Source: Callorhinchus milii (taxonomy: Eukaryota). Taken from it: a DNA stretch of 64,000 bases. Below the pieces are notes generated by a model. The model did not search any database. It was given only the letters and a program-made list of their open reading frames with translations, and was not told where the DNA came from. Made by a program: the position numbers and the translations under genes. Each line of letters begins with the position of its first letter. The stretch's first letter is position 1. Location: contig NW_024704746.1 in assembly GCF_018977255.1 (NCBI RefSeq), positions 4,960,001-5,024,000 on the forward strand. The letters run 5' to 3'. Shown one piece after another: positions 3,281 to 46,200 of the stretch.

Positions 3281-3314
<34 letters not shown>

Positions 3315-7978: not shown

Positions 7979-10204
7979 GCGGACAACGTCACCCTCACTG
8001 CATGGCCTGCCCTGCCTGCAACGTCCCCTGCTGTCCGCAGCCTGTAAATACCACTGCTCCCCACAGCTAGACTGGCTTTTCTTGTAGTATATGTGTGAGA
8101 GAGACAGAGACAGCTGTCTGTCTCAGCTGTAACAGTCCATATGTGCGACTGTCTCTCTGGGTAGAAAGGTCCCTCTGTCCTGCTGCGCTGCGATGTGCAG
8201 TGTTGGCTTATAGCCAGGAATAGGACATTTAACCCTTTTCTTTCACCATCATTTCAAGAAGCTTAAAAGATTAAATTTGGACAAATTGTAACCATAAACA
8301 AACGGCTGACATCTTTTTGTGGGAACCATTGTGCTCTCTCTCTCCATCCTGTTAGCCGCTGAACAAGGCCCCTCGTGGTGAGGTGTCTGGCTGGTGCCTG
8401 ACACACAGTCACACACAGGCCAGCGAGGCTGTCCCAGCTCTCATTACCACTGCCCTCTCCCCATCCCCCTTATCAAAAGTCTATCCTCATCCACCCGTCC
8501 ACGTCCCTCATGACATCCACAATGGACTCTGCCTCCACCCCTGACCCGACTTTACTGTCCACATCCGAACAGCTGTGCAGTGACTGTGTGTATGTTCTCA
8601 AAGTAAAACACTGTGACTCCCATCACGATCTTGTGTTCCTCAGTCCATGTGCATCCCGTATTTGCTCAACCTCTTAATAGGTTCCCAGGGCAGGAGGGTG
8701 GTGTTAGAGAACAGATATCTCAAAGCGTTTCCCAGGATTCAAGCTCCACATCAGGATTTGAAATCATATAGGCTAAGCTGACGCTCCAATGCAGTGCTGG
8801 GGGTGTGTTTTATTGTCGGAGATGCCGTCCTTTGGATGAGACTTTAACTGAGGACCTGCTTGCCTGTTCAGGTGGATGTTAAAGATCCCATGGCAATATT
8901 CACAACTGGCTGCCATGTTTTGCACACAAATACACAATCACTCCACTTTACAGTAAATCCTGTGAAGCACTTTGAGATGTCTCAACGCTGTGATAAAGCG
9001 CAATATCAAATGCAAGGATTTATTATTATTTTCTGTAACGTGGACCAACTGTATTTTGTGGGCAAACACCTGTCAATACGAGTGGTTGGGAAAGAGCGAG
9101 ATTGGGGGTAGAGTGAAGGGGGAGTTAGGGAGAGCAAGGGTGGGGGGTGGAGAGAGTGATGGGGGATTGGGGGGAGAGCAAGGGTGGTGGGAGAGAGAGC
9201 AAGGGTGGGGGTGAGTGACGGTGGAGTGGGAGAGGGGGAGGGTGGGTTAGGGAAGAGTGATGGTGGGGGAGAAAGAGTGAGGGGGAATGAAGGGAAAGTG
9301 AGGGGGGTAGGGGAGACAGTAAGGGTGAGGAGATAGTGAGGGTGGGTGCATGAAGAGAGAAGGGGGGAGAGAGCGGTGAGGATGGGGCTGGGAGTACAGT
9401 TACCAGCACTACCTGGAGGCTTTTAGCCGGGCGGGGGTATAATTGTCTGGATAGCACAAACCTGACATCCCAAAGCCTCAGTCCTGCCTGTGGCGTGGTC
9501 GGGGCGGGAGCTAAACTGAGCCGCACTGGGTACAGTTGCCTCTGATGTTGGTTCTTGTTGGAAATTGTTGTAAAATGGGCGAAAGTGGAATTAATAAAAA
9601 TCTGACGTCCAAGGCTTTGTGTGTTTGGGCTGAAATTGCTGCAGTTTCCCTCAGGGAAGCCAGAGACGGGTAGAGATATCACCTGTGCCTCACAGTTTAT
9701 TCTCACCTCTTCTCTCCCCCATAATTTACAATAATCCTTACATTTGATAGAGAGCATTATATCGTCAAGAAGTCTCAAAGCGCTTCACAAGATATACTGT
9801 GAAGTGCAATAACTGTGTTTGTGAACAAATGCAGCAGCCAATTTGCACCCAACAACGTCCACAAATATCCGTGAGGTGAGTGACCAATTATAGCGTCTTA
9901 TCATTCGGAATGTGGTCTCAAAGCGCTTAACAAGATATACTGTAAAGTGGAGTCACTGTGTATTTTGTCGGTGAAACGTGACAGCCATATTTACACATAG
10001 CAGCGTCCCACAAACAGCCGTAAGGTGAGTGATCAATTGTATCTGGGGGATTGTCAGCCAAGCCCCGGGGAGAGAGAAATTCCCTTCTCTTTTCCAATAG
10101 CACTGTTTAAAAATGAAGATGTCAGACTCCGCTGTGACCCCCCCAACCCTGACCGAGCCTCAAACATGAATGAACAGCAGCCACTGCCGACGATTGAAAG
10201 TTTT

Positions 10205-10215
10205 TTTATTTTATT
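10205..10215 (-). terminator. Tandem AATAAA polyadenylation signal of Ig kappa cluster 1
   Basis: TTTATTTTATT on the plus strand, ~350 nt downstream of the C stop; conserved in cluster 2 at 43280-43290. Confidence 0.65.
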
Positions 10216-10567
10216 TTCTCAACGCGACCGGGTGTTTACAGAGAGGGAAAGGCATACAATGAGCAACTGAGAGTCTGAGCCGAGCTGCCTGCGAGAGAGG
10301 CCTGAAGCCAGCACAGGGGGAGTGTGAGCGGGGCAGCAGTAGGGCTGATGTGCTCGCTCTGGGCTTCAGTTACTCAACAATAACAACTTGCATTTACATA
10401 GCGCCCTCATGCAGGGTAGCATCTAAGAGCGCTTACAGACTATATGTGTGTGGGTGCGTGGGGTGGGGGGGGGGATTTGAACACGTCAGAGAGACGGGGA
10501 TGACTGTAGCCACCCCCGCCTCATTCTCCCTGTATCTTCCGGCTGGTGTCTGTGACATTGACAGTCA

Positions 10568-10893
10568 CTACACGCACTCGGTTGCCCTGATGGTCTGTGT
10601 GAGGGGGCCCGTGAGGCTTTCGTGTGTGACGACACAGGAGAAGCGGGCGTCCGAGGCCCAGACCTGTGCGGGCAGGGTTAAGGTGCTGCTCACACTGTAA
10701 CTGTGGTCCGAGCCCGTCACTGAGCCGCTGGTCTTGACTCCGTCGGTCACCGTCACCATGTCCTTCTGCCAAACCAACTGCAGAGTGTTGGGGAAGAAGT
10801 GGTTGGCCAGGCAGAGCAGCGTGGCCGTGCCCTTAGATATCTCCTCAGTCGAGGGCGGCAGTAAAGTCAACACCGGCTTAGCCACGTCTCTGT
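10568..10893 (-). CDS. IGKC: Ig light chain (kappa-type) constant exon, cluster 1
   Basis: Phase-1 acceptor CCCACAG; RDVAKPVLTLLPPS...TATLLCLANHFFP...W...YSVSSTL...FSCVVTHESL...ECV* is a C1-set Ig domain with the terminal Cys for the heavy-chain bond. Confidence 0.93.
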
Positions 10894-10944
10894 CTGTGGG
10901 ACACAGCAACACGTTCGATTCACATCAGACACCGATAGGTCAAT

Positions 10945-11320
10945 AGTCACACACACACACAGCAGTGACACTAACACACTGACGAACACAGCCATGTGCG
11001 CTCACACAATTACTCACATACATGTTCCCACAGATCTTGACGGACACACATACACAGCAGTGACGCACAGCGACACACACACAGCAGTGACACACACACA
11101 CAGCAGTGACACACACACACAGCAGTGACGCACAGCACAGTGACACACACAGCACAGTGACAGACACACAGCAGTGACACACACACACACACACACAGCA
11201 CAGTGACAGCAGTGACAGACACACACAGCAGTGAAACACACACAGCAGTGACTGACACACACAGCAGTGACTGACACACACCGCAGTGACACACACACAC
11301 AGCAGTGACTGACAGATTAG
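10945..11320. repeat. (CACACACAGCAGTGA)-type microsatellite in the J-C intron
   Basis: Visible tandem array; a shorter homologue lies at 42355-42450. Confidence 0.9.
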
Positions 11321-12629
11321 TATCCGCTTAAACACAGAAACAACCAATCACAACACAGGACGTCAATTGCTGTCACATTGTGAATAGTCAGAGAGTGACT
11401 GTGTGTGTGAGTGACAGCCACAGCCACTCACTGACTGACATCTTCACCTGTTGGGCAGCTGCTGCACCGAGTCTGTGTCCACGTGTGGTTGTGCATGATT
11501 GTGTGCGTGTGTTTGTGCTGTGACTGTTTGTGTGTGACTGTGTCAGTGTGAGTTGGAGTGTATCAGTGAGATGATGGTGTGTGACTCTCCGTGTGACGGG
11601 AGGTTGAGAAATTGCCACGAACTCTACATGTATGTGAGGGCAGCCCAGGCTGGGACCAGCTCGTGATCGCAGTCAGTACTCGTTCCTGAGGGATTTGGGC
11701 CATTTAAAGGTGAGCGCCTCTACCGTATAATGTGTCTTTCCCCCCTCTGTAAATAACTTTCCCGCCCGGGCTCTCGGGATAGTGACTGACGCTATTGCTT
11801 AACATTTAAAAACCTTGTCGACGCTCCGCAGAAAGTCTCCATTTAGTTTGTGTCACAGACTGTTAAACCATTGGGGCAGAGGCGACCCTTTAACACTGTG
11901 AGGCTGAAGTGACTGTGAAGACTGGGAGCCCAGGCGAGGTTTAACCACTCAAATGCCCCCACACAGCACAGCCCATTCCACCCACATTGTACAGTGAGCC
12001 TCTGGGATCCCTATCGCCTGCTCTTCCCCTCTGATCCCCTTCCTCCCCATGTGCCCACAATTCCCATGTTGCCACCCCCACAATCAGCTCTGGTCCCCCG
12101 GCACCTCATCCCGCTCTGACAGACCCCCACGGCAAGTATTCTGCCCAACATTTAAATATAAATTATTGTTAAAATATAAATAAATAATTATATAATCTAC
12201 TAATTAAATATATATTATTCCCTTGGTTATAAATTAAACCTTAAATCCATGGACCGCAAACACCTGATTAACAAACAGCCGGAGACACGGTAACAACGAG
12301 CCTTACAATTGATTCACGTCGGGACATCGTCTCAACGCGCTTCATGGATTGACTGTAAAGTGCTGACATTGTGCGTGATCACCGCAACCAATTTGTGCAT
12401 AGCGGTGTCCCACCAAACAGCCATGATTTCATGTGGGGGATTGTTGGCCAGGACATTGGGAGAGAGAAACTCCCTTGTGCCTTGAGTTCTTTAACCTCCA
12501 CCTGAACAGGAGCTCAGTTTAATGTCCCATTTGAAGGACCGCAACTCTGACAATGCAGCTAATCCCCAGATTTACTTGCAATCATCTGGAGATCTCCACT
12601 CTTTAACCCCATTTCCCTGCACTCTCCCC

Positions 12630-13110
12630 ATTGTCTCATAGAATCATAGAGCACAGAAGGAAAGGAAGCCATTCGGACCATCCTGTCCGCTCTTTCAATA
12701 GAGCTATCCAAATCAATCCCACTCCCCTGCGCCCTCCCCATAGCCCAGCAAACTTGTCCTCCCCAAATAATACTCTACTTCTCTCTTAAAAGTTGTTATC
12801 GAATCAGCTTCCAAAACCCTTTCAGGCAATGCATTCCGTCTGGGCTGGTGCTCACTCTCCACTGGAGCTCTCTACTTGTCTGCTCTTTCCATACAACCCT
12901 TCAAAATATTTTTTCGTTAAGCCATTATGGCCATTTGTTCCACCATCTAAATTTATCTGTGTAAAACTTCTGGTTATAATCCTCAATTACTGTCTACTTG
13001 ATGGTGATCAGTGGAAATACTGTTTATTTACTCTGTGAAACTCATCAGTTTGAAAACCTCTGTCCGATTTTCACCGCCACCTAATAACCTTCTCTGCCCC
13101 CACCTGTTAT
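12630..13110 (-). mobile_element. CR1 LINE 3' fragments
   Basis: CATAGAATCATAGAGCACAGAAGG...GCCATTCGGACCATC is the reverse complement of a CR1 3' end. Confidence 0.65.
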
Positions 13111-13583
13111 GCCCTCTCATCTCTGATATTACCAAGCTAGTCCTGTCATCCCTCTGAAGCTCACAGCCCAGTGCAGTGCTGGGGGAGTGCAGCATTGTCA
13201 GACGTGCTTTCTTCCATTTAACATTTTTAAATATCCCTCGGCACTATTGGAAAAGAGAAGGGAGTTTCTCTCTCCCGATTCCTGGCTGACAATAGTCTGA
13301 ATAAAATTGGTCACTCACTTCATGGCTGTTTGTGGGACGTGCACAAATTGGCTGCCTTGTTTGCCTAACAAATTCAGTCACTGCACTTTGCAGTGCACAG
13401 TGCAAATCCTGTGAACTGCTATGAGATGTTACAATTATGCAATAAATACCATATGAAATGCCGGGATTATTATTATTGTTAGATGAGTAAGATCCTTGAT
13501 ATAAACATTCTGCTGGGTTAGGGAGTTTTGCTTTGCTTCAGGGTTTAAAGGCTTAAAAGAAAAGGTTTCCACCATGTACTCAC

Positions 13584-13618
13584 TCAGAACCAATTCTGTT
13601 CCTTTACCAAACGTGTTC
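13584..13618 (-). CDS. IGKJ: Ig kappa J segment, cluster 1 (NTFGKGTELVL)
   Basis: FGxGT motif, GTGAGT donor in phase 1, adjacent 23-RSS. Confidence 0.93.
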
Positions 13619-13657
13619 CACAGTGTTACATTACAATGATCCGCCCGTACAATATCT
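13619..13657 (+). promoter_or_regulatory. 23-spacer recombination signal sequence of J1
   Basis: CACAGTG (13619-13625) + 23 nt + ACAATATCT (13649-13657). Confidence 0.88.
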
Positions 13658-14818
13658 CAGCCTCCTCCTCCCCCACTGACTGCCCCCCCTCCCCTCTTCC
13701 CCACACACACTGCATTGGGGAAACACACAGCCTGCTCACTAGGATTTATTTAATAATAAAATAATAAACCGTGCACCTGATATCTCGCCTTTCACATGGG
13801 GAGGGCGTCTCACAGAGCTTAATAAGATATATTGTAGAGTGTAGTGACTGTGTAAGTGAACGCAGCAGCCAATTGGTGCACAGCAGCGTCCCACAAACAA
13901 ACATTAAGTGAATCCAAACATTCTCAAAAATCCATCAATTTCATATCTGGCAAAAATATTGTCCATTAAAGTGTATAAAAGTGCTCAAGCCTCTTAATGT
14001 AGATAGTTCCCGTCGCAGGAGCATTAGCAATGCATGAAATTTCACCTGGTCTCAGCCTCAGAATTCTTTATTTTAGCCACTGCTAAAACTAACTTCTCGA
14101 TCTCCCTGCCTCAATCCCTCCACCTCATCCCCTCTTTATCCATCTTTAATCACATTTTAATACCCAGCTCTGCAAGTTGTTGTTGTAATCTGTAATGTGG
14201 AGCAGTGATGGAGAATCCAGTCTGTATTTGAAAGCTGTTTGTTCCCCAGTTTGTTCAAATAAAACTGGCTGCTAAACTCAAACAGACAGACTTTCACAAT
14301 TCTTCCCCTCCGTATGTTCACAATTTGAACAGCAACAACATGAAACAGTGTAGGCAGTGAGAGAAGACAACTGAGCAGTTAGCTCCAGTGGAGGAGCGAG
14401 TAACAATACAGGCTCATGAGGGGAGGTTGGGATCTCTGAGGCTGGAACTACACAAAGCACTTGGTGAAGTGTGTAGGATGTAACTGTGTAACATTCTGTA
14501 TTAAATAACTGTTTTACTAAAAAATTCGAAACTGGTGAAATTAATCTACAACGTGTCCAGTGACAACCAGCAGCTTGGGCTGTTTCTGCCTGTACCTGTA
14601 TAGTGACTGTGTGATGGCTGTGTCTTTGTGTGTGTGTGTGTGTGTGTGTGAATGAGAATATAAGTGTGTGAATGTCAGTGCGTGAACGTGTTTGAGTGTG
14701 CCAATGTGTGTGCGTATGTGTTTGAGTGTGTGAGTGCGTACAATTGTTGAGTGTGAATGAATACGAGTCTATGTGTGAGTCTGTGAGTGTGAGTGTTTGT
14801 GAGCCTATGAATGAGTGA

Positions 14819-14846
14819 GGTTTTTGTAGGGCTGTGTATCACTGTG
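14819..14846 (-). promoter_or_regulatory. 12-spacer RSS of V1
   Basis: Minus strand CACAGTG-ATACACAGCCCT-ACAAAAACC, a perfect consensus; V-12/J-23 is the kappa configuration. Confidence 0.97.
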
Positions 14847-15624
14847 TCGCTAGAGCTCTGGTACCCCATACAATAGTAGTCAGCAAAATCCTCAGGTTGC
14901 ACGCCAGTGATGGTCATTGTGAAAGTAGTGGAGGATTGGTGACCACTGAACCGGGCGGGGGTGCCCGTATAGAGAGTTGTTGCACTGTAAATGAGAAGTT
15001 TGGGACGCTCCCCGGCTTTCTGTTGATACCAGCCAAGGTAGTTGCTGATGCTGCTACTCGCTTTACAGGTGATGGTGGCCGTTTGACCGACAGTCACTGG
15101 CAGCATTGAGGGCGTCTGTGTCATTACAAGCTCACCGCTGACACCTGTGGGGAAGAAAAGCAGGTGATAAACTAACAGCAAAATCTTCCTGTAAAATCAC
15201 AAACCCTGATCCTTACACACTTCATTCCCACCAGCAAAGACACACAGTCTCTAGAGGTTGTGGTTACAACAACAACAACAACAACAAGATTCCACTTATA
15301 GAGCGCCTTTCACGTCAGGAGGACGTCCCAAGGCGCTGCACAGTTGGGTCATGACCCGAGCAGGGGGGAAATGGTCAGGGTGAGGGGAGGGAAGGGAGGG
15401 AGAGAGGAGGGGGAAATGGTCAGGGTGAGGGGAGGGAAGGGAGGGAGCGAGGAGGAGGAAGAGAGTCGAGAGGGGAGCTGAAGGCACGGTCAAAGAGAAA
15501 GAGGCAAAGAGGCACGGTTACTCAGCTAATTCTGCACTGAGAGCGCATGTGAAGCGGGGGAGAGAGAGCGGTTACCAGCGAGCCAGAACACTACAGGCAG
15601 GAGCAGGTGGGTAGAGGACAGCAT
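14847..15624 (-). CDS. IGKV: Ig kappa leader + V segment, cluster 1 (unrearranged)
   Basis: Leader exon 15624..15576 ([16 protein letters not shown]), V exon 15144..14847 (ELVMTQTP...[20 protein letters not shown]...[14 protein letters not shown]); conserved Cys/Trp/Cys; open frame. Confidence 0.96.
15268..15515 (-). mobile_element. Truncated L2/SINE-tail insertion in the V1 leader intron with 6-bp TSD
   Basis: GGTTAC at 15262-15267 and 15516-15521; (TTG)n tail on the minus strand; absent from the homologous cluster-2 intron. Confidence 0.8.
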
Positions 15625-15673
15625 GGTGACCACGTCAGCTCTCACTGTTAATCTGCCGTTCCCTCAGCCACTG

Positions 15674-15711
15674 CTTTATACTTGCAGCCAGGCTCAGGGC
15701 TGTATGCAAAT
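15674..15711 (-). promoter_or_regulatory. Ig V promoter of cluster 1: octamer + TATA
   Basis: ATTTGCAT on the minus strand (15704-15711) and TATAAAG (15674-15680) upstream of the ATG at 15624. Confidence 0.9.
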
Positions 15712-18700
15712 GGCAGCGTATCCCCAGACACAGGGACTGGGCTCCACCCATCCTCTCCTCTCACCCTCCTCTTCACCCTCTTCTCCATTCTTCTCTTTCC
15801 CTCCTCTCCCCTTCTCCTCTTGCTTTGTCTCCTGGATTCTCTCCCATTCCCATTGATGTACCAAACAAGGGGCCAGTGTGAGATTCAATCTGAGCTCATT
15901 GTATAGGGGCGATAATCACACACATGGTCATTATTACAATTAATAATACTCCTTGCGTTTGGTATCGGATTTCACAGCAGGAGGACGGCTGAAAGCACGT
16001 CACAGGATAAAGCTTACTTTACAAGATAAAGTAGTGTTGTAGTGACTGTGTTTTTGTGAGTGATGGCTTTTGGTGCACAGCAAAGGCCCACAAACAGGCA
16101 CCAAGTTTTTTTTTGTTTGCCTTTGGTCAGCCGGCTGTCTGACACACGTGGAAACTCATCACCATGCTTAAGAGATCCAAACCAAACTGAGAATTCCATG
16201 CATCCCATCTACACATTTGGGAGGTTATCGGTCAAGAGACAGGGAGAGACTACATGACAGAATTCCAGAATTCCCCCCCATCGGGCAGCTTCTTAGATGA
16301 TTTCCTGTATCCTGGCTTTGACCACCCTCCCCGGTAACCCTGTCCCTGTCATTAATTCCCCTCCAGGTAATCAGACATGTCCTGAAATTCCGCCCAGTCT
16401 TAGGAAAATCCTGAAATCCAGTCTTGATCTGGAAGGAGGTTTAGTTTTAAGAACCCAGCTCTCAATTCAGACAATGTGACAATTCTCCACAATCTTACCC
16501 TAGTAAAGGCAAAATGGTCTCCCAGGCTAAGACTGGGGGGAATTTCAGGACTCTGCTGTTGCTTCTAAACTTGTTCCTCATGTCCCCGAGCTGTACTAAA
16601 CAGTGACTACTGTGGACAATGGAGTGGATACTGGTCTCAGTTTCTTCCCCTCAGTCTCCCCCTCGCCTTTGGATCACTCACTCTCTCATGCTTGGCCTCT
16701 CACTTCTACCCCTCTATCTCTCGCCCTCCATCCTTGCCTTCTTACCCTCAGTCTGTCTCACTCTCGGTCTCTCCCCCTCAACTCTTGCCTCCGGCCAGCT
16801 GGCTGTGCAGTTATTTACAGATGTGCACCTGCAGTGCTGGCTTCCTGTGTTGCTGTCTGTGTCTTTCCGCTCTGTGAGTTTCTGAGTTATTTTCTGTGTG
16901 GGGGATTTCAGTCTCACTGCTGGAACCTATTAATAACGGTCCCAAGTATCGCAACAACAGCAGGTGAGAACTGTAAGGGCTGAACGCTACCCTCAGTGCT
17001 GTGAGTATAGGGGTAGTGTGGAAAACAACTTTGATGTAGTTACTGACAATATTAATAATTTATGCAATGTAATTATATAAAATGTTATTTATTTAGTTAT
17101 AGGGGTTTCTTATTTAATATATAATATATACATTATATTTTTAAAGTGCAAGTTGCTTAAGCTGGATACATCAGGGCTGGCTGTTTTGTTGGACTTTAAG
17201 CAGTGTCTGAGGGCAACCGAAGTTCCTTTACTTCTTTCCTTCCTGCCCAGCAGAGGAAAGGAAGTGGCAACTCGGAGGTGATTGATAGCTGGCTCCAGGC
17301 TATCAATCAATCACAATTTGACTCCTCCTATTCCCTCCCTTGTTTCTTCCCCGTTCCTCCCCACCTCATTTATTGACCACCCGGCCAGAGCCACTTGTAG
17401 ACTGTGGTAAGGTTTCGGTGGGTTTGAAGCTGTTGAAGGTAGTCGAAGAGGATTTTGAAGGCACGAGACAAAGGGAGTTTGAGAGCAAGTTCCGGAGGGT
17501 GACTAAAGGTTAACAACTGATGGTGGGGCAGAGCGAATGAGAGTAGAGTGGTAATAATAATCCTTACATTTCATATGGCGCCTTTCACATCGGAACTTAC
17601 TGTAAAGTGGAGTGACTGTATTTTATGGACGAATGCGCAGCTAATTTGTGCACAGCAATCTTCCACAATCAGTCATGAAGTGAGTGACTGATTTTATCTG
17701 GGGGGATTGTTGGCCAGGACACCAGGAGAGAGAAACTCCCTTCCTTTTTCCAATAGTGCCATGGGATCTTTAACATCTACCTGAATGGGCAGACGTGACC
17801 TTGGTTTAACATCTCATTCAAAGGAAGGTATCTCTGACAAGGCAGTGCTCCCCCAGTTTTACACTGGAGCATCAGCCTAGAATGTGAGTTCAAATTCCCT
17901 TAGATGGGGCTTGAACCCCCAACCTCTGACTCCGAGACAAGTGACTGAGCCAGACTGATGCTTCCTCAATGTGGGGACCTGGAAGTTGATAGAAATAACC
18001 CGAACACCAGCCCAGCTAACAGCCAACCAGCGACCTGTGTAGCTCAGTGTATTTACTCACGTCAGGACTCGGAACTTACATTTCCAAAGTAGACACTGCA
18101 GTGTAGTGCTGGGGGAGAGGTACATCTGTGGAGGCGCCATCCTTTGGATGAGCAGTGCCTGTACAGCAAAGTGGGGAGAATACAGCAGAGGGACACTGGG
18201 AACTGGGAGGAATGAAACCGTGTCATTTGGGACAATCACGTTTATAATCAAACAAATTACTGGGACTGAGAACATAAGAGTCTGCTGGCGAAAGAAGACC
18301 ACGGTTCATCCAGTTCACCTTCCAACATCCTGGCAGTCGCACGACATGTTATGTCCCAAACTATATATTGTTTTCTAACAGAAAGCTATCTAATTTGTTC
18401 TTGAACAAATCAACACTTTCTGCTTTCACCGTCTCCCTGGGGAGCCTGTTCCATATGTTTACTACTCACTCACCTGAACCAAGAAATTGAATGAAATATA
18501 TCAAGACACAGAGCGAGTTCACAGGACGTGAGAACCAAGAGCCAGAGGTCAAAGACTGGTAACAAGCACTCAGAGGGATCAGACTAGCTGTGAGGCTTCA
18601 GGTTAAGGATTCTCGTTGAGGATCAAACAAAATATTCGCTGAGAAAGCTTCCAGTACATTCTGTACCTGTCTACGAGTGTGCAAGGTTGATGGGGTGGAA

Positions 18701-38091: not shown

Positions 38092-38129
38092 ATTTGCATA
38101 CAGCCCTGAGCCTGGCTGCAAGTATAAAG
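38092..38129 (+). promoter_or_regulatory. Ig V promoter of cluster 2: octamer + TATA
   Basis: ATTTGCAT 38092-38099, TATAAAG 38123-38129, ATG at 38179. Confidence 0.9.
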
Positions 38130-38178
38130 CAGTGGCTGAGGGAACGGCAGATTAACAGTGAGAGCTGACGTGGTCACC

Positions 38179-38703
38179 ATGCTGTCCTCTACCCACCTGC
38201 TCCTGCCTGTAGTGTTCTGGCTCGCTGGTAACCGCTCTCTCTCCCCCGCTCCACATGCGCTCTCGCTGCAGAATTAGCTGAGTAACCACAACCTCTAGAG
38301 ACTGTGTGTCTTTGCTGGTGGGAATGAAGTGTGTAAGGATCAGGGCTTGTGATTGCACAGGAAGATTTTGCTGTTAGTTTATCATCTGTTTGTCTTTCTT
38401 CCCCACAGGTGTCAGCGGTGAGATTATAATGACACAGACGCCCTCAATGCTGCCAGTGACTGTCGGTCAAACAGCCACCATCACCTGTAAAGCGAGTAGC
38501 AGCATCAGCAAGTACCTTTCCTGGTATCAACAGAAAGCCGGGGATCGTCCCAAACTTCTCATTTACTATGGAACAACTCTCTATACGGGCACCCCCGCCC
38601 GGTTCAGTGGTCACCAATCCTCCACTACTTTTACAATGACCATCACTGGCGTGCAACCTGAGGATTTTGCTGACTACTACTGTATGCAGAGCTATAGCAA
38701 CCC
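38179..38703 (+). CDS. IGKV: Ig kappa leader + V segment, cluster 2 (unrearranged)
   Basis: Leader 38179..38227, V exon 38409..38703 (EIIMTQTP...[17 protein letters not shown]...[10 protein letters not shown]); open frame. Confidence 0.96.
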
Positions 38704-38731
38704 CACAGTGATACACAGCCCTACAAAAACC
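38704..38731 (+). promoter_or_regulatory. 12-spacer RSS of V2
   Basis: CACAGTG-ATACACAGCCCT-ACAAAAACC, a perfect consensus. Confidence 0.97.
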
Positions 38732-39502
38732 TCACACACACTGCTTCCTGCCTTCACACACACTCACTCATAGGCTCACAAACTCTCACACAGACTCACT
38801 CGTATTTATTCACACTTAACAATTATAGCTCACTCAAACTCAACATTTATAGATATACACACACACTCAAAACATATTCACACACACTCACACAACACAC
38901 AAATGCACACTTGCTCTGACAAACACACAGACAGCCATCACACAGTCCCGATACAGGTACAGGCAGAAACAGCCCAAGCTGCTGGTTGCTATAATGTTGT
39001 CACGACATGTTTCACCAGTTTCGAATTTCCTAGTAAAACAGTTATTTAACATAGAACGTTACACAGTTACATCCTACACACTTCACCAAGTGCTTTATGT
39101 AATTCCACCTCCCCCCCCCCTCACTGCCTACAAGGTTTCATATTGTTGCTCTTCAAATCATCAACTTACGAAGGGGGATAATTGTGGAAGCCCTTTAACC
39201 CAATCTAAGTTTTGAAGTTGGTTTCGTTTGAAGAAACGGGGAAAAAAAAATTCAGAATGGATTTTCCATCACTGCTCCACCTTAATACAACAACTTGTAT
39301 TTTTCCAGTGCCCTTCATATAGGTTAGCGTATTTCACCTACAAATACACAGTCACTACACTTTACAATATATCCTGTGAGATGTCCTCCCCGTGTGAAAG
39401 GCGAGGATTATTTTATTAAACCTTGGTAAGCAGGCTGTACATTTCCCCAGTACAGTATGTGTGTGTGGGGAAGGGGGCAGTCAATGGGGGAGGATGAGGC
39501 TG

Positions 39503-39541
39503 AGATATTGCACAGACGGCACATTGTAATGTAATACTGTG
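39503..39541 (-). promoter_or_regulatory. 23-spacer RSS of J2 (non-consensus)
   Basis: Minus strand CACAGTA + 23 nt + GCAATATCT. Confidence 0.8.
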
Positions 39542-39576
39542 GTGGTCGTTCGGCAAAGGAACAAAATTGGTTCTGA
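39542..39576 (+). CDS. IGKJ: Ig kappa J segment, cluster 2 (WSFGKGTKLVL)
   Basis: FGxGT motif, GTGAGT donor at 39577 in phase 1. Confidence 0.93.
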
Positions 39577-40913
39577 GTGAGTATATGGCAGACACCCTTT
39601 CTTTAACTCTTTAAACCCCGAAGCAAAGCAAAACTCCCTAACCCAGCAGAATGTTTACATCAAGGATTTTACTTATTCTAACAACAATAATCCATTTCAT
39701 ATTGTGTTTATCACATCATTGTAGCATCTCATACCAGTTCACAAGATTTACTGTGAAATGTAGTGACTGAATATTTTGTAGGCAAACGCGGCAGACAATT
39801 TGCACATCAGCAACATCCCACAAACAGCCGTGAAGTGAGTGACCAATTTTATTCAGAGTATTGTTAGCCAGGACACGAGAAACTCCTCTTTTTCAATTGC
39901 GCCGAGGGCTATTTGATATGACATGAAGGAAGGCAGGTCTGCCAATGTAGTGCTCCTCCAGCACTGGGCTGTAACCTTCACAGGGATGACGGAACTAGCT
40001 CAGTAAAACCAGAAATGAGAGAGCAGCTTTTAAAGTGGGACAGAATAAAATAATAATACTGGCATTTGATATAGCGCCATATATCGTCTTTTTGAGATGT
40101 TTCAAATTGTTTCACAAAATGTATTGGAAAATTAATTGATTTATGTTTTATGCGCCAAGCGTAGCAGCCAACTGCATGCTGGCGTGTCTCACAAACACTT
40201 GTGGATTGAATGACCAAATTGTTATAGCTTTTTTTTCCTTGAGGGATTATTATCAGGTATGTAGAGTAAGCAAACTTTCCCAAGGATTCACCCTGCAAGG
40301 AATCGAACCCAGGTCTCTCACTTCCAAAGCTGGTGCTCTAACCACTGAGCTACAGGACTCCACGGTCCTGGTTACATGCAACTCATTTTGAGACTGGTTC
40401 CTCTAATCACTGGATAACTTGTTTATTCATATATTTTTGGTGGGATTATTACCCCCGGAAAAGTGATTGAGTAACAACCAGTTCCTATTAATGCTAGGTA
40501 AACAGGCGTATGGAGCAAGGAAACTTGCCCAACATTTCACCCTGCTCGGGAATCAAACCCAGATCCTTTTGAGAAGCGAGTGCTCTAACCACTAAGTTAG
40601 GGTGAGGGCAGAAATCAGACGGACGTTTTCAAACTGCTGTGTGGTTTCACAGAGTAAATGGAGGGTATTTCTGCCAATCGGCTAGTCACGATCAAGTCGA
40701 GTAGTTAAGGATTATCACCAGAGGTTTTACACGAATGAATTTAGATTGTGGAACAAATGGTCGTAATGGTTTAAGGAAACATTATTTTAAGGTTTATAGG
40801 GAAAAACAGAATGGGATTAGAGAAGAGAGCTCCAGTGGGGAGTGAGTACCAGCACAGACACAATGGGGAGAGAGCAGGGGATGGGGTAGAGAGCTCCAGA
40901 GGGCAGAGAGTAC

Positions 40914-41237
40914 ATAATAATAATAATCCTTGCATTTAATATAGCACTTTTCACGTCGGGAGGATGTCCCAAAGCGCTTCAGAGAACACACTGTAAAGTG
41001 AATTGACTGTATATTTGTGGGAGAACGCGGCAGCCAATTGTGCACAGCAATGTCCCACAAACAGTCGTAGATTGAAAATGACCAATTTTTTTTATTGTTT
41101 TTGGTTTTGGAGGGATTATTATTAGGCTCTGTGTGGAGTAAGGAAACTTGCCCAAGGTTTCGCCCTCTGCCTGGAAATGAACTCAGGTCTCTTGCTTGCA
41201 AAGCGAGTGCTCTAACCACTGAGCTACAGGACTCCAC
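40914..41237 (-). mobile_element. tRNA-derived DeuSINE-like SINE, young copy in the cluster-2 J-C intron
   Basis: Closely matches the copy at 160-487, including the AGAGCCTAATAATAATCCCTCCAAAACC segment; absent at the homologous position of cluster 1. Confidence 0.85.
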
Positions 41238-42603
41238 GATACATCTGGGTATCAGCTGCGTTGTCAGAGTTGTTGTCCTTCAAATTAGACATTAAACAGA
41301 GCGACTGTTCAGGTGGAAATTAACAAGCTCTATTTGAAGAGAGAAGGGAGTTTTTCTCTCCAGGTGTCCTGGCCAACAATCCCCCACATGAAATCATGGC
41401 TGTTTGGTGGGACACCGCTGTGCGCAAATTGGTTGCGGTGTTCACGCACAATGACAGCACTTTAGCGTCAATCCATGAAGCGCGTTGAGACGATGTCCCG
41501 ACATGAATCAATTGTAAGGCTCGTTGTTACCATGTCTCCGGCTGTTTGTTAATCAGGTGTTTGCGGTCCATGGATTTAAGGTTTAATTTATAACCAAGGG
41601 AATAATATTTTATATTTAATTCGTAGATTATATAATAATTTATTTATATTTAAGAATAATTTATATTTAAATGTTGAGCAGAATACCTGCCGTGGGGGTC
41701 TGTCTGTGGGGGCATTTGAGTGGTTAAACCTCGCCTGGGCTCCCAGTCTTCACAGTCACTCCAGCCTCACAGTGTTAAAGGGTCGCCTCTGCCCCAATGG
41801 TTTAACAGTCTGTGACACAAACTAAATGGAGACTTTCTGCGGAGCGTCGACAAGGTTTTTAAACGTTAAGCAATAGCGTCAGTCACTATCCCGAGAGCCC
41901 GGGGGGAAAGTTATTTACAGAGGGGGGGAAAGACACATTATACGGTAGAGGCGCTCACCTTTAAATGGCCCAAATCCCTCAGGAACGAGTACTGACTGCG
42001 ATCACGAGCTGGTCCCAGCCTGGGCTGCCCTCACATACGTGTAGAGTTCGTGGCAATTTCTCAACCTCCCGTCACACGGAGAGTCACACACCATCATCTC
42101 ACTGATACACTCCAACTCACACTGACACAGTCACACACACACAGTCACAGCACAAACACACGCACACAATCATGCACAACCACACGTGGACACAGACTCG
42201 GTGCAGCAGCTGCCCAACAGGTGAAGATGTCAGTCAGTGAGTGGCTGTGGCTGTCACTCACACACACAGTCACTCTCTGACTATTCAGAATGTGACGGCA
42301 ATTGACTTCCTGTGTTGTGATTGGTTGTTTCTGTGTTTAAGCGGATACTAATCTGTCAGTCACTGCTGTGTGTGTGTGTCACTGCTGTGTGTGTGTGTCA
42401 GTCACTGCTGTGTGTGTGTCACTGTGCTGTGCGTCACTGCTGTGTGTGTGTCCGTCAAGATCTGTGGGAACATGTATGTTTGAGTAATTGTGTGAGCGCA
42501 CATGGCTGTGTTCGTCAGTGTGTTAGTGTCACTGCTGTGTGTGTGTGTGACTATTGACCTGTCGGTGTCTGATGTGAATCGAACGTGTTGCTGTGTCCCA
42601 CAG

Positions 42604-42929
42604 ACAGAGACGTGGCTAAGCCGGTGTTGACTTTACTGCCGCCCTCGACTGAGGAGATATCTAAGGGCACGGCCACGCTGCTCTGCCTGGCCAACCACTT
42701 CTTCCCCGACACTCTGCAGTTGGTTTGGCAGAAGGACATGGTGACGGTGACCGACGGAGTCAAGACCAGCGGCTCAGTGACGGGCTCGGACCACAGTTAC
42801 AGTGTGAGCAGCACCTTAACCCTGCCCGCACAGGTCTGGGCCTCGGACGCCCGCTTCTCCTGTGTCGTCACACACGAAAGCCTCACGGGCCCCCTCACAC
42901 AGACCATCAGGGCAACCGAGTGCGTGTAG
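42604..42929 (+). CDS. IGKC: Ig kappa constant exon, cluster 2
   Basis: Phase-1 acceptor; protein identical to the cluster-1 C except FFPDT vs FFPNT. Confidence 0.93.
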
Positions 42930-43279
42930 TGACTGTCAATGTCACAGACACCAGCCGGAAGATACAGGGAGAATGAGGCGGGGGTGGCTACAGTCATCCC
43001 CGTCTCTCTGACGTGTTCAAATCCCCCCCCCCCCCACGCACCCACACACATATAGTCTGTAAGCGCTCTTAGATGCTACCCTGCATGAGGGCGCTATGTA
43101 AATGCAAGTTGTTATTGTTGAGTAACTGAAGCCCAGAGCGAGCACATCCGCCCTACTGCTGCCCCGCTCACACTCCCCCTGTGCTGGCTTCAGGCCTCTC
43201 TCGCAGGCAGCTCGGCTCAGACTCTCAGTTGCTCATTGTATGCCTTTCCCTCTCTGTAAACACCCGGTCGCGTTGAGAA

Positions 43280-43290
43280 AATAAAATAAA
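43280..43290 (+). terminator. Tandem AATAAA polyadenylation signal of cluster 2
   Basis: AATAAAATAAA ~350 nt after the stop. Confidence 0.65.
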
Positions 43291-46200
43291 AAAACTTTCA
43301 ATCGTCGGCAGTGGCTGCTGTTCATTCATGTTTGAGGCTCGGTCAGGGTTGGGGGGGGGGTCACAGTGGAGTCTGACATCTTCATTTTTAAACAGTGCTA
43401 TTGGAAAAGAGAAGGGAATTTCTCTCTCCCCGGGGCTTGGCTGACAATCCCCCAGATACAATTGATCACTCACTTTACGGCTGTTTGTGGGACGCTGCTA
43501 TGTGTAAATATGGCTGTCACGTTTCACCGACAAAATACACAGTGACTCCACTTTACAGTATATCTTGTTAAGCGCTTTGAGACCACATTCCGAATGATAA
43601 GACGCTATAATTGGTCACTCATCTCACGGATATTTGTGGACATTGCTATGTGCAAATTGGCTGCTGCATTTGTTCACAAACACACAGTTATTGCACTTCA
43701 CAGTATATCTTGTGAAGCGCTTTGAGACTTCTTGACGATATAATGCTCTCTATCAAATGTAAGGATTATTGTAAATTATGGGGGAGAGAAGAGGTGAGAA
43801 TAAACTGTGAGGCACAGGTGATATCTCTACCCGTCTCTGGCTTCCCTGAGGGAAACTGCAGCAATTTCAACCCAAACACACAAAGCCTTGGACTTTGTCA
43901 GATTTTTATTAATTCCACTTTTGCCCATTTTACAACAATTTCCAACAAGAACCAACATCAGAGGCAACTGTACCCAGTGCGGCTCAGTTTAGCTCCCGCC
44001 CCGACCACGCCACAGGCAGGACTGAAGCTTTGGGATGTCAGGTTTGTCCGACCATCCCAGTATGTTCCCCTCACCCCCCGGCTAATAGCGGTGGCCTCTG
44101 GGTAGTGCTGGTAACAGAGCTCCCCCCCACCCTTTGCTCTCTCCCCACCATCCACGCTCTCACTTACCCCACCACCCTCATGCCCTCCCCACCCACCCTC
44201 TTCACTCTTCCCACCCTCCCAATCCCCAACTCTTCCCCTCACTCTTCTACCCACCATCGCTCTCTCCCCCCCAATCCTCGCTCTCTCTTGCCCCTCTATC
44301 CCTCGCTCGGCCCTCTACCAATCCCAATCCCCACCCCTGGCCGTCTCCCACCCACATTTGGGTGTATCTTCCCCCTGACCCTCACTTTCCCTACCAGCCC
44401 TCCAGCGCTCTTCCCTTGTAGCTGTGATGGACAGCCTCTCCTTGACGCAGATTCACCAGAATTATACCAGGGTGTGAGCTACTTAAGGGTTAATCGAAAT
44501 AGGGTGAATATTTGGATTCATGGAGAGGGGTCACAGGTGTTCAGAGCCAGATAGTCTGTTGAATTTGTTAGATTGAGATATCAATCTGTTTATCTCTGTT
44601 AAGATGTAAAAATGCTGATTAAATGTTTTTGGTTTATGGCTTCTTTGTTAGATTTTTTGAGTTATGGTCCTTTCGGAGCCTTTTAGTCTGAACAATGGTT
44701 AACGGTTGAGTTAATGAGTTTTCTGTTTTCGAACTGTCAAAGTACGAAGGATTTATTTATTCTCACCCAGAGATAAGATATTGTGACAAGAGCTTAAAGG
44801 GTTAAATTATGAGGACAAGTTGCATAAACTTGGCTTGTATTCCCTGGAGTTTAGAAAGTAGAGGTGATTTGATTGAGGTCTAACAGAGTGTGGAGGAAGG
44901 AAACTTGCCAGGGTTTCACCCTGCCCGAGAATCGAACCCGAGTCCTCTGCTTGCGCGATGAACGCGTAAAACACTACCCTACACGACTCCACAGCTCTAT
45001 CCACTTTACGTTAATGCCACGACTCTTGATATTGTTTCCTTATCCAGTACCTTATCAAAGGCTTTCTAAATCTCAAACGTTCACCACATTTCCTTCATCT
45101 TTGCTGTTACCTCCTCAGAAAATTCTGCTCGATTAGTTAAACGCAATCCATGCTTAATAAACGTTATTCTTCCCTAAATGTTTGTCAAAAATATTATTTA
45201 AAATCAACTCCTAACAACATTTTTGAATCAGATGTGTCCAAACGTTCAGAGGAAGCTAGACCTTCACATGAAGGAGAAGGGAACAGAAGGGTGTGGGAGG
45301 GAGTAAGAAATGGGTGAAAACTGGTGTGAGTATAAACACCGGCATGTGGGCTGAGTGGTCTGTTTCCGTACTGCACATTCTTTGCAAATCTTTGTAATTT
45401 GGCCAGTTGAGACTAACCGGCCTGCAGTCTCCAGGTTTATCTCAATCCCCAGTTTCTAATCAATGGCATGACATTGACATTTGACATGCTGCAAGCTGGA
45501 ATGCATTGCCTGTAAGGGTGGTGGAAGGCAATTCGATAACACGTTTTTCAAGAGAGAATTAGATAGATATTTGGGGAGCACAAGTTTGCAGGGTTATGGG
45601 GAGAGAACGGGTGAATGGAATTGATTTGGATAGTTCTTTTCAAAGAGCTGGCACAGACACGATGGGTCAAATGACCTCTTTCTGTGCTGTATAATTCTAT
45701 GATTCTTTGAAGCTTTTCCTGGGTTTTAACAACATTAGAAAAATTTCAGTCTGAACTCCCACTACTGAAATCTTCCTTAACACTGCCTTACCATGGGAAT
45801 GTGTGTGTGTGAGGGGGTGTTTAGAATAATAATAATAATCCTTGCATTTAATATGGTGCTTTTCACGTCTTCTAGATCTCTCAAAGGCGCTTCACAGAAT
45901 ATACTGTAAAGTGAATTGACTGTATATTTGTGGGCGAAACACGGCAGCCAATTGCACACAGCAGTGTCCCACAAACAGTCGTGGATTGAGTGACCAAATT
46001 GTTATTGTTTTTTTTCTTGAGGGATTATTATCAGGCGTGTGAAGTAAGGAAACTTGCCCAAGTTTTCAACCTGCCAGGAATCAACCCCAGGTCTCTCTCT
46101 TGCAAAGCTAGTATTCCAACCACTGAGCTACAGGATTCCACAGTCCTGGTTACATCCAATTCATTTGAGACTGGTTCCTCTAATCACTGGATATAAAGCA

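What the first reader, a model, noticed from the sequence alone, without database searches (positions are those of the whole stretch)
9380..44110. RNase L gene caged between two head-to-head Ig kappa miniloci forming a ~7.5-kb inverted repeat
Two complete, apparently functional L-V-J-C clusters point outward from a ~19.6-kb spacer whose only recognisable gene is RNASEL with its promoter. This physically embeds an interferon-pathway antiviral nuclease inside an antigen-receptor locus. Ig promoters and enhancers could influence RNASEL in B cells, and the arms are a substrate for homologous inversion of the spacer. I know of no description of such a unit.
Basis: partly seen in the sequence, partly recalled or inferred. 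Interest (0 to 1): 0.85.

Follow-up and report, generated by a model that had tools for sequence, protein, structure and literature searches.

The report
RNASEL flanked by inverted Ig-kappa miniclusters
In the elephant shark (Callorhinchus milii) the antiviral RNase L gene lies between two outward-facing copies of an antibody kappa light-chain gene cluster; the layout is real, but it is best read as an old inverted duplication of ordinary shark-type antibody clusters next to a gene still in its ancestral neighbourhood, not as a new functional unit.

Summary
Arms at 9456-17140 and 36457-44047 form a 7.6-kb inverted repeat around a 19.3-kb spacer. Each arm carries one intact kappa (type III/NS4-like) L-V-J-C minicluster that is not germline-joined and is transcribed outward. 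It has an octamer and TATA box, a split leader, a V with a 12-RSS, a J with a 23-RSS, and one C exon.

The spacer's only recognisable gene is an intact six-coding-exon RNASEL. It differs at 2 of 803 residues from the C. milii cDNA-derived protein V9K7E5.

The arms are not an assembly artefact. They are a mosaic of old segments (K about 0.2-0.3, with arm-specific SINE insertions) and homogenised tracts (promoter to V, and a 2.7-kb C block at about 99%).

- RNASEL still sits beside its tetrapod-conserved neighbour RGSL1, and SEC22B lies on the other side.
- More kappa clusters exist elsewhere in the genome.
- Nothing shows co-regulation.

A new point is that kappa-RNASEL linkage is shared with elasmobranchs. 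A C-kappa relic lies 9.8 kb from RNASEL in the bamboo shark. Clusters lie 0.9 Mb away in the basking shark and 1.5-1.7 Mb away on both sides in the cloudy catshark. The linkage therefore probably predates the holocephalan-elasmobranch split.

Interest is moderate to low.

The parts
9456..17140 (.). Inverted-repeat arm A (7685 bp)
   Evidence: Collinear reverse-complement blastn and MAFFT alignment to 44047-36457. Identity falls to about 50-70% just outside both edges.
36457..44047 (.). Inverted-repeat arm B (7591 bp)
   Evidence: Carries two tRNA-derived SINE copies (40042-40416, 40914-41237) that arm A lacks.
15674..15711 (-). Cluster A V promoter: octamer ATTTGCAT (15711-15704) and TATAAAG (15680-15674)
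   Evidence: Read directly from the sequence. Lies in a block 98.4% identical to arm B.
15576..15624 (-). Cluster A leader exon (ATG at 15624; [17 protein letters not shown])
   Evidence: Identical leader in C. milii kappa cDNA proteins.
14847..15144 (-). Cluster A V-kappa exon
   Evidence: Pfam V-set, E=1.5e-15. Conserved Cys23, WYQQ and YYC. 96% identical overall to cDNA protein K4G4T3.
14819..14846 (-). Cluster A V RSS: CACAGTG, 12-bp spacer, ACAAAAACC
   Evidence: Identical (28 of 28) to the arm B RSS.
13584..13657 (-). Cluster A J with 23-RSS: nonamer AGATATTGT 13657-13649, heptamer CACTGTG 13625-13619, J coding 13618-13584 (NTFGKGTELVL), then GTGAGT donor
   Evidence: This J peptide is the one used by most C. 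milii kappa cDNAs.
10568..10893 (-). Cluster A C-kappa exon including the stop codon; AATAAA at 10215-10210
   Evidence: Pfam C1-set, E=1.6e-21. Acceptor cccacag. Protein identical to the C region of 10 of the 12 C. milii kappa cDNA-derived proteins (13-member cluster, one an Ensembl gene model).
38092..38129 (+). Cluster B V promoter: octamer 38092-38099 and TATAAAG 38123-38129
38179..38227 (+). Cluster B leader exon
38409..38703 (+). Cluster B V-kappa exon
   Evidence: Pfam V-set, E=6.6e-16. Differs from V of cluster A at 12 of 276 nt, with replacements mainly at the N-terminal end of framework 1 and in CDR1 and CDR2, and a different CDR3.
38704..38731 (+). Cluster B V RSS (12-bp spacer)
39503..39576 (+). 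Cluster B J with 23-RSS: nonamer AGATATTGC, heptamer TACTGTG 39535-39541, J coding 39542-39576 (WSFGKGTKLVL)
   Evidence: No cDNA with this J was found among 12.
42604..42929 (+). Cluster B C-kappa exon including the stop codon; AATAAA at 43280-43285
   Evidence: Pfam C1-set, E=2e-21. One nucleotide (Asn to Asp) differs from C of cluster A.
21832..28785 (-). RNASEL coding region, six exons: 28785-27156, 25477-25302, 24996-24788, 24671-24542, 22569-22424, 21952-21832 (stop)
   Evidence: exon 1 matches V9K7E5_CALMI ('2-5A-dependent ribonuclease', 803 aa) at a rounded 100% (one substitution by tblastn); every residue mapped and all introns are GT-AG. Pfam finds Ank repeats, Pkinase and Ribonuc_2-5A.
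31751..33500 (-). CpG island, candidate RNASEL promoter and non-coding exon 1 (inferred only)
   Evidence: CpG observed/expected 0.7-1.24 and GC 0.52-0.59. A polypyrimidine-AG acceptor lies 14 nt 5' of the ATG. No transcript evidence is available here.
41301..44047 (.). Homogenised C block (arm B coordinates; arm A 12513-9455): 3' part of the J-C intron, the C exon and the 3' flank
   Evidence: 97.2%, 99.7% and 99.0% identity, against 74-84% in the neighbouring old segments.
50989..60737 (-). Context: 3' exons of RGSL1, the conserved neighbour of RNASEL
   Evidence: RGS Pfam hit. An HMMER search followed by source names gave 'regulator of G-protein signaling protein-like / RGSL1'. Collinear tblastn exons.
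2447..7978 (+). Context: SEC22B-like gene (longin and SNARE exons), convergent with cluster A
   Evidence: Pfam Longin, E=1.6e-18. Exon peptides [10 protein letters not shown]... and ...YVRFWWL*. The gene name comes from my own knowledge of SEC22B.

Best explanation
The window comes from Callorhinchus milii. It holds two ordinary cartilaginous-fish kappa (type III/NS4-like) light-chain miniclusters. They arose by an old inverted segmental duplication of about 7.6 kb and now bracket RNASEL.

Each cluster is an autonomous unit. An octamer/TATA promoter drives L-V. RAG joins V (12-RSS) to the single J (23-RSS) 0.8-1.2 kb away by deletion. The VJ exon is then spliced to the single C exon.

RNASEL is an independent, intact innate-immunity gene that has kept its ancestral position beside RGSL1. 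It is a bystander of the duplication, not part of an Ig regulatory unit.

Since the duplication, the arms have diverged neutrally (K about 0.2-0.3) and have gained different SINEs and indels. They still exchange sequence by gene conversion: a tract from the promoter to the V RSS, and a 2.7-kb C-region tract, are kept at 95-100%.

Linkage of kappa clusters to RNASEL is itself old, because elasmobranchs share it.

Shown: the anatomy, the intactness of the genes, the mosaic divergence and the linkage in other species. Inferred: the duplication-plus-conversion history and the independence of RNASEL regulation.
For: - Species and gene identity: RNASEL exon 1 matches V9K7E5_CALMI at a rounded 100%, with one substitution. 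The kappa composite is 96% identical to C. milii cDNA protein K4G4T3 and 55% to nurse-shark NS4, and NCBI names the shark hits 'immunoglobulin kappa light chain-like'.
- Complete cluster anatomy with a 12/23 RSS arrangement in both arms.
- Mosaic divergence, as Jukes-Cantor K: 0.18 upstream, 0.016 promoter plus leader, 0.05 V, 0 V-RSS, 0.21 V-J interval, 0.20 J, 0.31 5' part of the J-C intron, 0.028 3' part of the J-C intron, 0.003 C, 0.010 3' flank.
- SINEs specific to arm B.
- The RNASEL reading frame is intact with GT-AG introns. C. milii RNase L was active with OASa in yeast (PMC10400998).
- RGSL1 lies 7 kb beyond arm B. RGSL1 and RNASEL share a contig in turtle and alligator, judged by matching contig lengths.
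- Linkage elsewhere. Chiloscyllium punctatum has a C-kappa exon fragment 9.8 kb 3' of RNASEL; it matches bamboo-shark kappa at 42 of 42 residues and has a homologous 3' flank. In Cetorhinus a kappa cluster lies 0.89 Mb from RNASEL. In Scyliorhinus torazame clusters lie 1.46 Mb on one side and 1.68 Mb on the other. In Hemiscyllium, RNASEL and two of the three listed kappa-like genes share a chromosome; the third is on a 72-kb scaffold.
- Twelve C. milii kappa cDNAs imply further clusters elsewhere.
Against: - No read-level or second-assembly check of the arrangement was possible.
- The young tracts could reflect a second, more recent partial duplication rather than gene conversion.
- No cDNA exactly matches either germline V, and none carries the J or C of cluster B. 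Expression of these two particular clusters, cluster B especially, is therefore unproven.
- Tight adjacency in elasmobranchs rests on one species. The copy seen there is a partial C exon cut off by the end of the fetched locus, and it has a frameshift about 13 codons before the stop.
- The skate, the basking shark and the catshark show no Ig exon within 10 kb of RNASEL.
- Absence of co-regulation is an inference; no expression or chromatin data were available.
Confidence: 0.8

Rival explanations
1. One reading: a functional unit. The Ig-kappa promoters or enhancers of the two flanking clusters regulate RNASEL in B cells, and the arrangement is kept by selection for that coupling.
For: The V promoter of cluster B lies only about 4.6-6.4 kb from the CpG island upstream of RNASEL and is divergent from it. 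Kappa-RNASEL linkage is conserved in several chondrichthyans.
Against: - Distance and orientation are not conserved. The clusters point outward at kb scale in C. milii. A convergent relic lies at 9.8 kb in the bamboo shark. Elsewhere the distance is 0.9-1.7 Mb, and nothing lies within 10 kb in the skate.
- No non-coding element is conserved between chimaera and shark kappa clusters.
- No kappaB or ISRE motif was found.
- RNASEL has its own CpG island.
- No expression data are available.
Confidence: 0.08
2. A recombination cassette. The pair works as an invertible segment. This could happen by RAG-mediated inversional joining between clusters (V of A to J of B, or V of B to J of A; both are allowed by the 12/23 rule). 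It could also happen by homologous recombination between the C blocks. Either event flips about 25-29 kb including RNASEL, in B cells or as a population polymorphism.
For: - The opposite orientation of the clusters, with V 12-RSS and J 23-RSS in both, makes inversional joins geometrically possible.
- Inversional joins between IgL clusters are documented in zebrafish (PMC3014032).
- The 2.7-kb tract at about 99% shows that the arms do recombine.
Against: - None of the 12 C. milii kappa cDNA proteins combines a B-type V with the A-type J or the reverse, and none uses the J or C of cluster B.
- Shark rearrangement is mainly within a cluster (stated in PMC12227049).
- The J heptamer of cluster B is TACTGTG and its nonamer matches the consensus at only 5 of 9 positions.
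Confidence: 0.1
3. Assembly artefact or collapsed or expanded haplotype: the second arm is a false inverted duplication.
For: Inverted duplications are a known failure mode of long-read assemblers. The outer 2.7 kb is about 99% identical.
Against: - Most of each arm is only 74-84% identical, with hundreds of gap columns.
- The arms have different SINE insertions, different J segments (13 of 74 nt differ), different CDRs and a 250-bp indel in the leader intron.
- A unique 19.3-kb spacer separates them.
- Ensembl-derived UniProt models exist for the arm A cluster (A0A4W3HE31, exact match) and for a V almost identical to that of arm B, including its 3' flank read-through (A0A4W3HE60).
Confidence: 0.02

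Closest known systems
Cartilaginous-fish Ig light-chain miniclusters, kappa / type III / NS4 isotype
   Same: One V, one J and one C within about 5 kb. Split leader and octamer promoter. V 12-RSS and J 23-RSS. Not germline-joined. Best named relatives are shark 'kappa light chain-like' genes and nurse-shark NS4. The general organisation is described in PMC12227049 and PMC4279169.
   Different: Two clusters are arranged as a diverged inverted repeat around an unrelated single-copy gene. The genomic neighbourhood of kappa clusters had not been described in the papers I could search.
Teleost (zebrafish) IgL multi-cluster loci with opposite-orientation segments and inversional rearrangement between clusters (Zimmerman et al. 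2008, PMC3014032)
   Same: Several V-J-C clusters on one chromosome, some in opposite orientation, so that joins between clusters by inversion are possible.
   Different: In zebrafish such joins were shown experimentally. Here none is seen in 12 cDNAs, and a non-Ig gene lies between the clusters.
Non-receptor genes nested in antigen-receptor loci: trypsinogen genes in TCRB, ADAM6 in IGH, DAD1 beside TCRA (from my own knowledge, not tested here)
   Same: An unrelated gene lies physically between antigen-receptor gene segments without being part of the receptor.
   Different: In those loci the gene lies inside one translocon-type locus. Here it lies between two self-contained miniclusters and keeps its ancestral neighbour RGSL1.
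RGSL1-RNASEL neighbourhood of tetrapods (human 1q25.3; adjacency from my own knowledge)
   Same: RNASEL lies next to RGSL1 in C. milii. The two genes share a contig in turtle and alligator.
   Different: In C. milii a kappa minicluster is intercalated between RGSL1 and RNASEL, and another lies between RNASEL and SEC22B.

Membership tests
Ig kappa (type III/NS4) light-chain minicluster | V-set exon with split leader, followed by one J and one C1-set exon within a few kb | tested here: met
   Pfam V-set and C1-set hits in both arms. Leader, J and splice sites were read directly. The clusters span 5.5 and 5.2 kb.
Ig kappa (type III/NS4) light-chain minicluster | Kappa-type RSS arrangement: V with a 12-bp spacer, J with a 23-bp spacer | tested here: met
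   V RSS is CACAGTG-12-ACAAAAACC in both arms. J RSS has a 23-bp spacer with heptamer CACTGTG (A) or TACTGTG (B) and a nonamer matching the consensus at 6 of 9 (A) or 5 of 9 (B) positions.
Ig kappa (type III/NS4) light-chain minicluster | Sequence groups with kappa rather than lambda, sigma or sigma-2 | tested here: inconclusive
   The best named hits are shark 'kappa light chain-like' genes (50-58% identity), nurse-shark NS4 (55%) and possum kappa (48%), against a shark lambda-1-like protein at 44%. No formal phylogeny with sigma or sigma-2 outgroups was built. A PDB sequence search was uninformative.
Ig kappa (type III/NS4) light-chain minicluster | Evidence that the cluster rearranges and is expressed | tested here: inconclusive
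   Twelve C. milii cDNA proteins share the J and C of cluster A, but none matches either germline V exactly and none has the J or C of cluster B.
RNase L (2-5A-dependent ribonuclease) | N-terminal ankyrin repeats, then a pseudokinase, then a KEN (Ribonuc_2-5A) domain in one intact reading frame | tested here: met
   Pfam finds Ank, Pkinase and Ribonuc_2-5A. All 803 residues map to six GT-AG exons.
RNase L (2-5A-dependent ribonuclease) | OAS/2-5A-dependent RNA cleavage | not testable with these tools
   Reported for C. milii RNase L co-expressed with OASa in yeast (PMC10400998).
Inverted segmental duplication undergoing gene conversion | Collinear reverse-complement arms with sharp edges, plus tracts of much higher identity that include non-coding DNA | tested here: met
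   Identity is 97-99% in the intron and 3' flank of the C block, against 74-84% in the adjacent segments.
   Orientation and distance differ between species. Only exons are conserved between chimaera and shark kappa clusters.

The most novel reading that the evidence does not exclude
The kappa-RNASEL adjacency is ancestral to all cartilaginous fishes (more than 400 million years old). It would then mark the primordial chromosomal home of the kappa light chain in a block resembling human 1q25. In C. milii the head-to-head pair would also act as an invertible cassette, through RAG inversional joins or homologous recombination between the C blocks, that flips RNASEL and exposes it to Ig regulatory elements in B cells.
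Probability: 0.1. Interest if true: 0.6.

Novelty: new member of a known kind. Interest (0 to 1): 0.33.

Why it matters
A 2025 paper states that the genomic distribution of shark Ig miniclusters is 'not well known' (PMC12227049). This window gives a clean, fully annotated example of how such clusters multiply, by inverted segmental duplication, and how they stay alike, by conversion tracts over the promoter-V and C regions while the V-J and J regions drift.

The recurrent linkage of kappa clusters to RNASEL in a chimaera and four elasmobranchs offers a concrete anchor for tracing where the kappa locus sat before bony vertebrates moved it.

It does not, on present evidence, reveal a new immune mechanism or a functional tie between antibody genes and the OAS-RNase L pathway.

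Tried and rejected
- An Rfam scan of the whole window found only tRNA-like SINE heads.
- There is no kappaB-like site in either J-C intron; the three 1-mismatch hits in the window are fewer than chance expects. There is no ISRE anywhere in the window.
- The bacterial-type promoter and terminator scan of the CpG island is irrelevant for a vertebrate.
- blastn between C. milii arm B and six elasmobranch kappa loci, looking for conserved enhancers, matched only the V-plus-RSS and C exons and one low-complexity repeat.
- blastn of the RNASEL upstream region against four elasmobranch RNASEL loci found nothing conserved.
- A PDB sequence search with the C domain, meant to separate kappa from lambda, was swamped by multi-domain heavy chains.
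- The look-up of bamboo-shark RNASEL isoform X2 failed and was recovered through isoform X1.
- The look-up of kappa gene P0135 returned no DNA, so the full cluster next to bamboo-shark RNASEL could not be read.
- The supplementary immunogenome note of the elephant-shark genome paper is not held. I could not check whether that note already draws these two clusters.
- Rejected idea: RNASEL moved into an Ig locus. Its neighbour RGSL1 is conserved.
- Rejected idea: the clusters are germline-joined. Intact RSSs are present on both V and J.

Full report
**Source and observation**

The window is from the elephant shark, Callorhinchus milii, a holocephalan. The long minus-strand ORF at 27082-28797 matches the UniProt entry V9K7E5_CALMI ('2-5A-dependent ribonuclease', 803 aa) at a rounded 100% (one substitution by tblastn).

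The repeat finder and a self-blastn show a collinear inverted repeat:
- Arm A is 9456-17140 and arm B is 36457-44047 (7685 and 7591 bp).
- The spacer is 19316 bp.
- Identity drops to background just outside both the inner and the outer edges.

The only N in the window is at 54216, far from the feature, and I did not touch it.

**The two Ig clusters**

Pfam finds a V-set and a C1-set exon in each arm. Reading the DNA gives the same anatomy in both arms:
- an octamer ATTTGCAT and a TATAAAG box;
- a 49-nt leader exon ([17 protein letters not shown]), an intron and the V exon;
- a consensus RSS, CACAGTG-12-ACAAAAACC;
- 0.8-1.2 kb further on, a nonamer, a 23-bp spacer, a heptamer and a J (FGKGTxLVL) with a GTGAGT donor;
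- 2.7-3.0 kb further on, an acceptor and a C exon ending in ...ATECV-stop;
- AATAAA about 350 nt downstream.

Cluster A runs 15711 to 10210 on the minus strand. Cluster B runs 38092 to 43285 on the plus strand. The two are head-to-head and are transcribed away from the spacer. They are not germline-joined.

A composite L-V-J-C protein is 96% identical to the C. milii cDNA protein K4G4T3 and 55% identical to the nurse-shark NS4 chain. Its other best hits are shark genes that NCBI names 'immunoglobulin kappa light chain-like'. Together with the V-12/J-23 RSS arrangement, this supports the kappa (type III) isotype. I did not build a formal tree.

**RNASEL**

All 803 residues of V9K7E5 map to six minus-strand exons with GT-AG introns: 28785-27156, 25477-25302, 24996-24788, 24671-24542, 22569-22424 and 21952-21832. 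There are two amino-acid differences. Pfam shows the ankyrin, kinase-like and Ribonuc_2-5A parts. A published study found C. milii RNase L active with its OASa partner in yeast (PMC10400998).

Ten other spacer ORFs have no Pfam match. The only other recognisable element is a LINE-like fragment at about 19.7-20.4 kb, which also matches introns of shark RNASEL loci.

The promoter is unresolved. A CpG island lies at about 31.75-33.5 kb and an acceptor site lies 14 nt before the ATG. However, elasmobranch gene models start about 200 bp upstream of the first coding exon.

**Is the repeat real, and how old is it?**

A MAFFT alignment of the arms, scored by feature, gives a mosaic:

| Segment | Jukes-Cantor K |
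|---|---|
| Upstream region | 0.18 |
| Promoter plus leader exon | 0.016 |
| Leader intron | 0.047 |
| V exon | 0.05 |
| V RSS | 0 |
| V-J interval | 0.21 |
| J plus its RSS | 0.20 |
| 5' part of J-C intron | 0.31 |
| 3' part of J-C intron | 0.028 |
| C exon | 0.003 |
| 3' flank | 0.010 |

Several further differences separate the arms:
- Arm B has two tRNA-derived SINE copies that arm A lacks.
- The leader intron differs by about 250 bp.
- A 19-bp minisatellite before the C exon has different copy numbers in the two arms.
- The V exons differ at 12 of 276 nt with dN roughly equal to dS. The replacements lie mainly at the N-terminal end of framework 1 and in CDR1 and CDR2, and CDR3 differs.

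This pattern does not fit a false assembly duplication. It fits an old duplication followed by gene conversion, or a second partial duplication, over two tracts that include non-coding DNA. UniProt/Ensembl models exist for the arm A cluster (A0A4W3HE31, exact match) and for a V almost identical to that of arm B, including its flank (A0A4W3HE60).

**Surroundings**

Beyond arm B, the RGS-domain exon at 58450-58806 belongs to RGSL1. A full HMMER search followed by the source names gave 'regulator of G-protein signaling protein-like' and 'RGSL1'. Skate, coelacanth and turtle RGSL1 proteins align collinearly to minus-strand exons from 60737 down to 50989. From my own knowledge they are adjacent at human 1q25.3.

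Beyond arm A, a SEC22B-like gene (plus strand, 2447-7978) ends 1.5 kb from the repeat. No further Ig exon occurs in the window. RNASEL is therefore in its ancestral neighbourhood, with two Ig miniclusters intercalated around it.

**Other species**

Gene positions come from NCBI assemblies.

| Species (record) | RNASEL | Kappa clusters |
|---|---|---|
| Scyliorhinus torazame (CM105028.1) | 165.717-165.762 Mb (+) | 163.585 Mb (+), 164.252 Mb (+), 167.443 Mb (-) |
| Cetorhinus maximus (OZ077463.1) | 76.545-76.570 Mb (-) | 75.646-75.655 Mb (+), 0.89 Mb away and convergent |
| Chiloscyllium punctatum (CM104974.1) | 36.359-36.384 Mb (-) | 2.48, 9.07 and 13.05 Mb |

In the bamboo shark (C. punctatum), the last 166 bases of the fetched RNASEL flank encode the C-terminal half of a C-kappa exon. 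It matches bamboo-shark kappa chains at 42 of 42 residues. It then has a frameshift about 13 codons before the stop, and 1 kb of its 3' flank is 84% identical to another kappa locus. This kappa relic lies 9.8 kb 3' of RNASEL and is convergent with it.

In Hemiscyllium ocellatum, RNASEL and two of the three listed kappa-like genes share a chromosome; the third is on a 72-kb scaffold. In Amblyraja radiata no Ig exon lies within 10 kb of RNASEL, and the neighbouring gene is a RabGAP-TBC gene.

The linkage is therefore shared by holocephalans and elasmobranchs, but spacing and orientation vary.

**Expression evidence**

Twelve C. milii kappa cDNA-derived proteins were aligned to the two germline clusters:
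- Ten have the C of cluster A exactly; the other two differ from it at one or two residues. Nine have the full J_A peptide (TFGKGTELVL) and two more its FGKGTELVL core.
- None has the C (Asp) or the J (TKLVL) of cluster B.
- None matches either germline V exactly; their CDR2 variants are DAT, RAT and SAT.

More kappa clusters with near-identical C regions must therefore exist elsewhere. Use of these two particular clusters is unproven, and no chimera between A and B is seen.

**Mechanism**

Shown: each cluster has everything needed for RAG-mediated deletional V-J joining within the cluster and for transcription and splicing as an ordinary light-chain gene. RNASEL is an intact, separate gene.

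Inferred:
- The pair arose by inverted duplication and is kept partly homogeneous by gene conversion.
- The conversion tracts show that the arms can pair, so homologous inversion of the interval is possible.
- The 12/23 rule would also allow inversional V(A)-J(B) or V(B)-J(A) joins, as documented between zebrafish IgL clusters (PMC3014032). Such a join would flip about 25 kb including RNASEL without breaking it.

Neither kind of inversion is evidenced here.

**Literature**

No held paper mentions RNASEL together with shark light chains. A 2025 study of shark Ig/TCR linkage says the distribution of the IgH and IgL miniclusters 'is not well known', and it does not cover kappa-RNASEL linkage. The supplementary immunogenome note of the elephant-shark genome paper is not held, so prior depiction of these clusters cannot be excluded.

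**Verdict**

The feature consists of known kinds of element, kappa miniclusters and an inverted segmental duplication, placed around a gene that has stayed in its ancestral neighbourhood. The modestly new point is an apparently ancient kappa-RNASEL linkage. Interest is 0.33.

Noticed in passing
L001 and L002 (Chiloscyllium punctatum CM104974.1, 13.04-13.07 Mb and 9.06-9.09 Mb, opposite strands): Two kappa cluster loci 4 Mb apart are 99.88% identical over the full 29 kb fetched and lie in inverted orientation. This is either a large, very recent inverted segmental duplication or an assembly duplication in the bamboo shark.
   Followed up: partly
L007:45092-45257 (C. punctatum, 9.8 kb 3' of RNASEL): C-kappa exon fragment cut off by the end of the locus. 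It matches the expressed kappa C region at 42 of 42 residues, then has a frameshift about 13 codons before the stop. It is probably a pseudogene relic. The rest of the cluster could not be fetched.
   Followed up: partly
window 2214-3740: Very GC-rich (GC 0.69), strongly C-skewed minisatellite array with units of about 16, 33 and 67 bp and about 27 copies of the 33-mer. It lies in the first intron of the SEC22B-like gene, just after its first coding exon (ATG at 2447).
   Followed up: partly
window 11073-11309 and about 42353-42552: A 19-bp minisatellite (ACACACACACAGCAGTGAC, about 13 copies in arm A) lies in the J-C intron, roughly 180 bp upstream of the C-kappa exon in arm A and about 50 bp in arm B. 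Copy number differs between the arms although it sits inside the roughly 99% homogenised block.
   Followed up: partly
window 26507-26710 and 26909-27111: A 200-bp inverted repeat (87% identity, 198-bp loop) in RNASEL intron 1, starting 46 bp after the exon-1 donor. It may be a MITE-like insertion or a hairpin.
   Followed up: no
window 38409-38770 compared with UniProt A0A4W3HE60 (P0148): An Ensembl model from a C. milii assembly matches the V of arm B and its 3' read-through exactly, except in and next to CDR2 (IHTATT against IYYGTT). This could be an allele, a conversion variant or a near-identical paralogous cluster.
   Followed up: partly
window 156-480, 40042-40416, 40914-41237, 45820-46140, 54836-55141 and others: A roughly 320-bp tRNA-derived SINE family is scattered through the window. 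Rfam tRNA hits mark the SINE heads.
   Followed up: partly
protein P0162: A C-kappa-like fragment (56% identical to the C. milii chain) is deposited at NCBI as a Salmonella enterica protein on a 990-bp contig. This is almost certainly vertebrate contamination of a bacterial assembly.
   Followed up: no
window 390-1166 and 52424-53059: LINE endonuclease and reverse-transcriptase fragments on the minus strand. The second lies inside an RGSL1 intron.
   Followed up: partly
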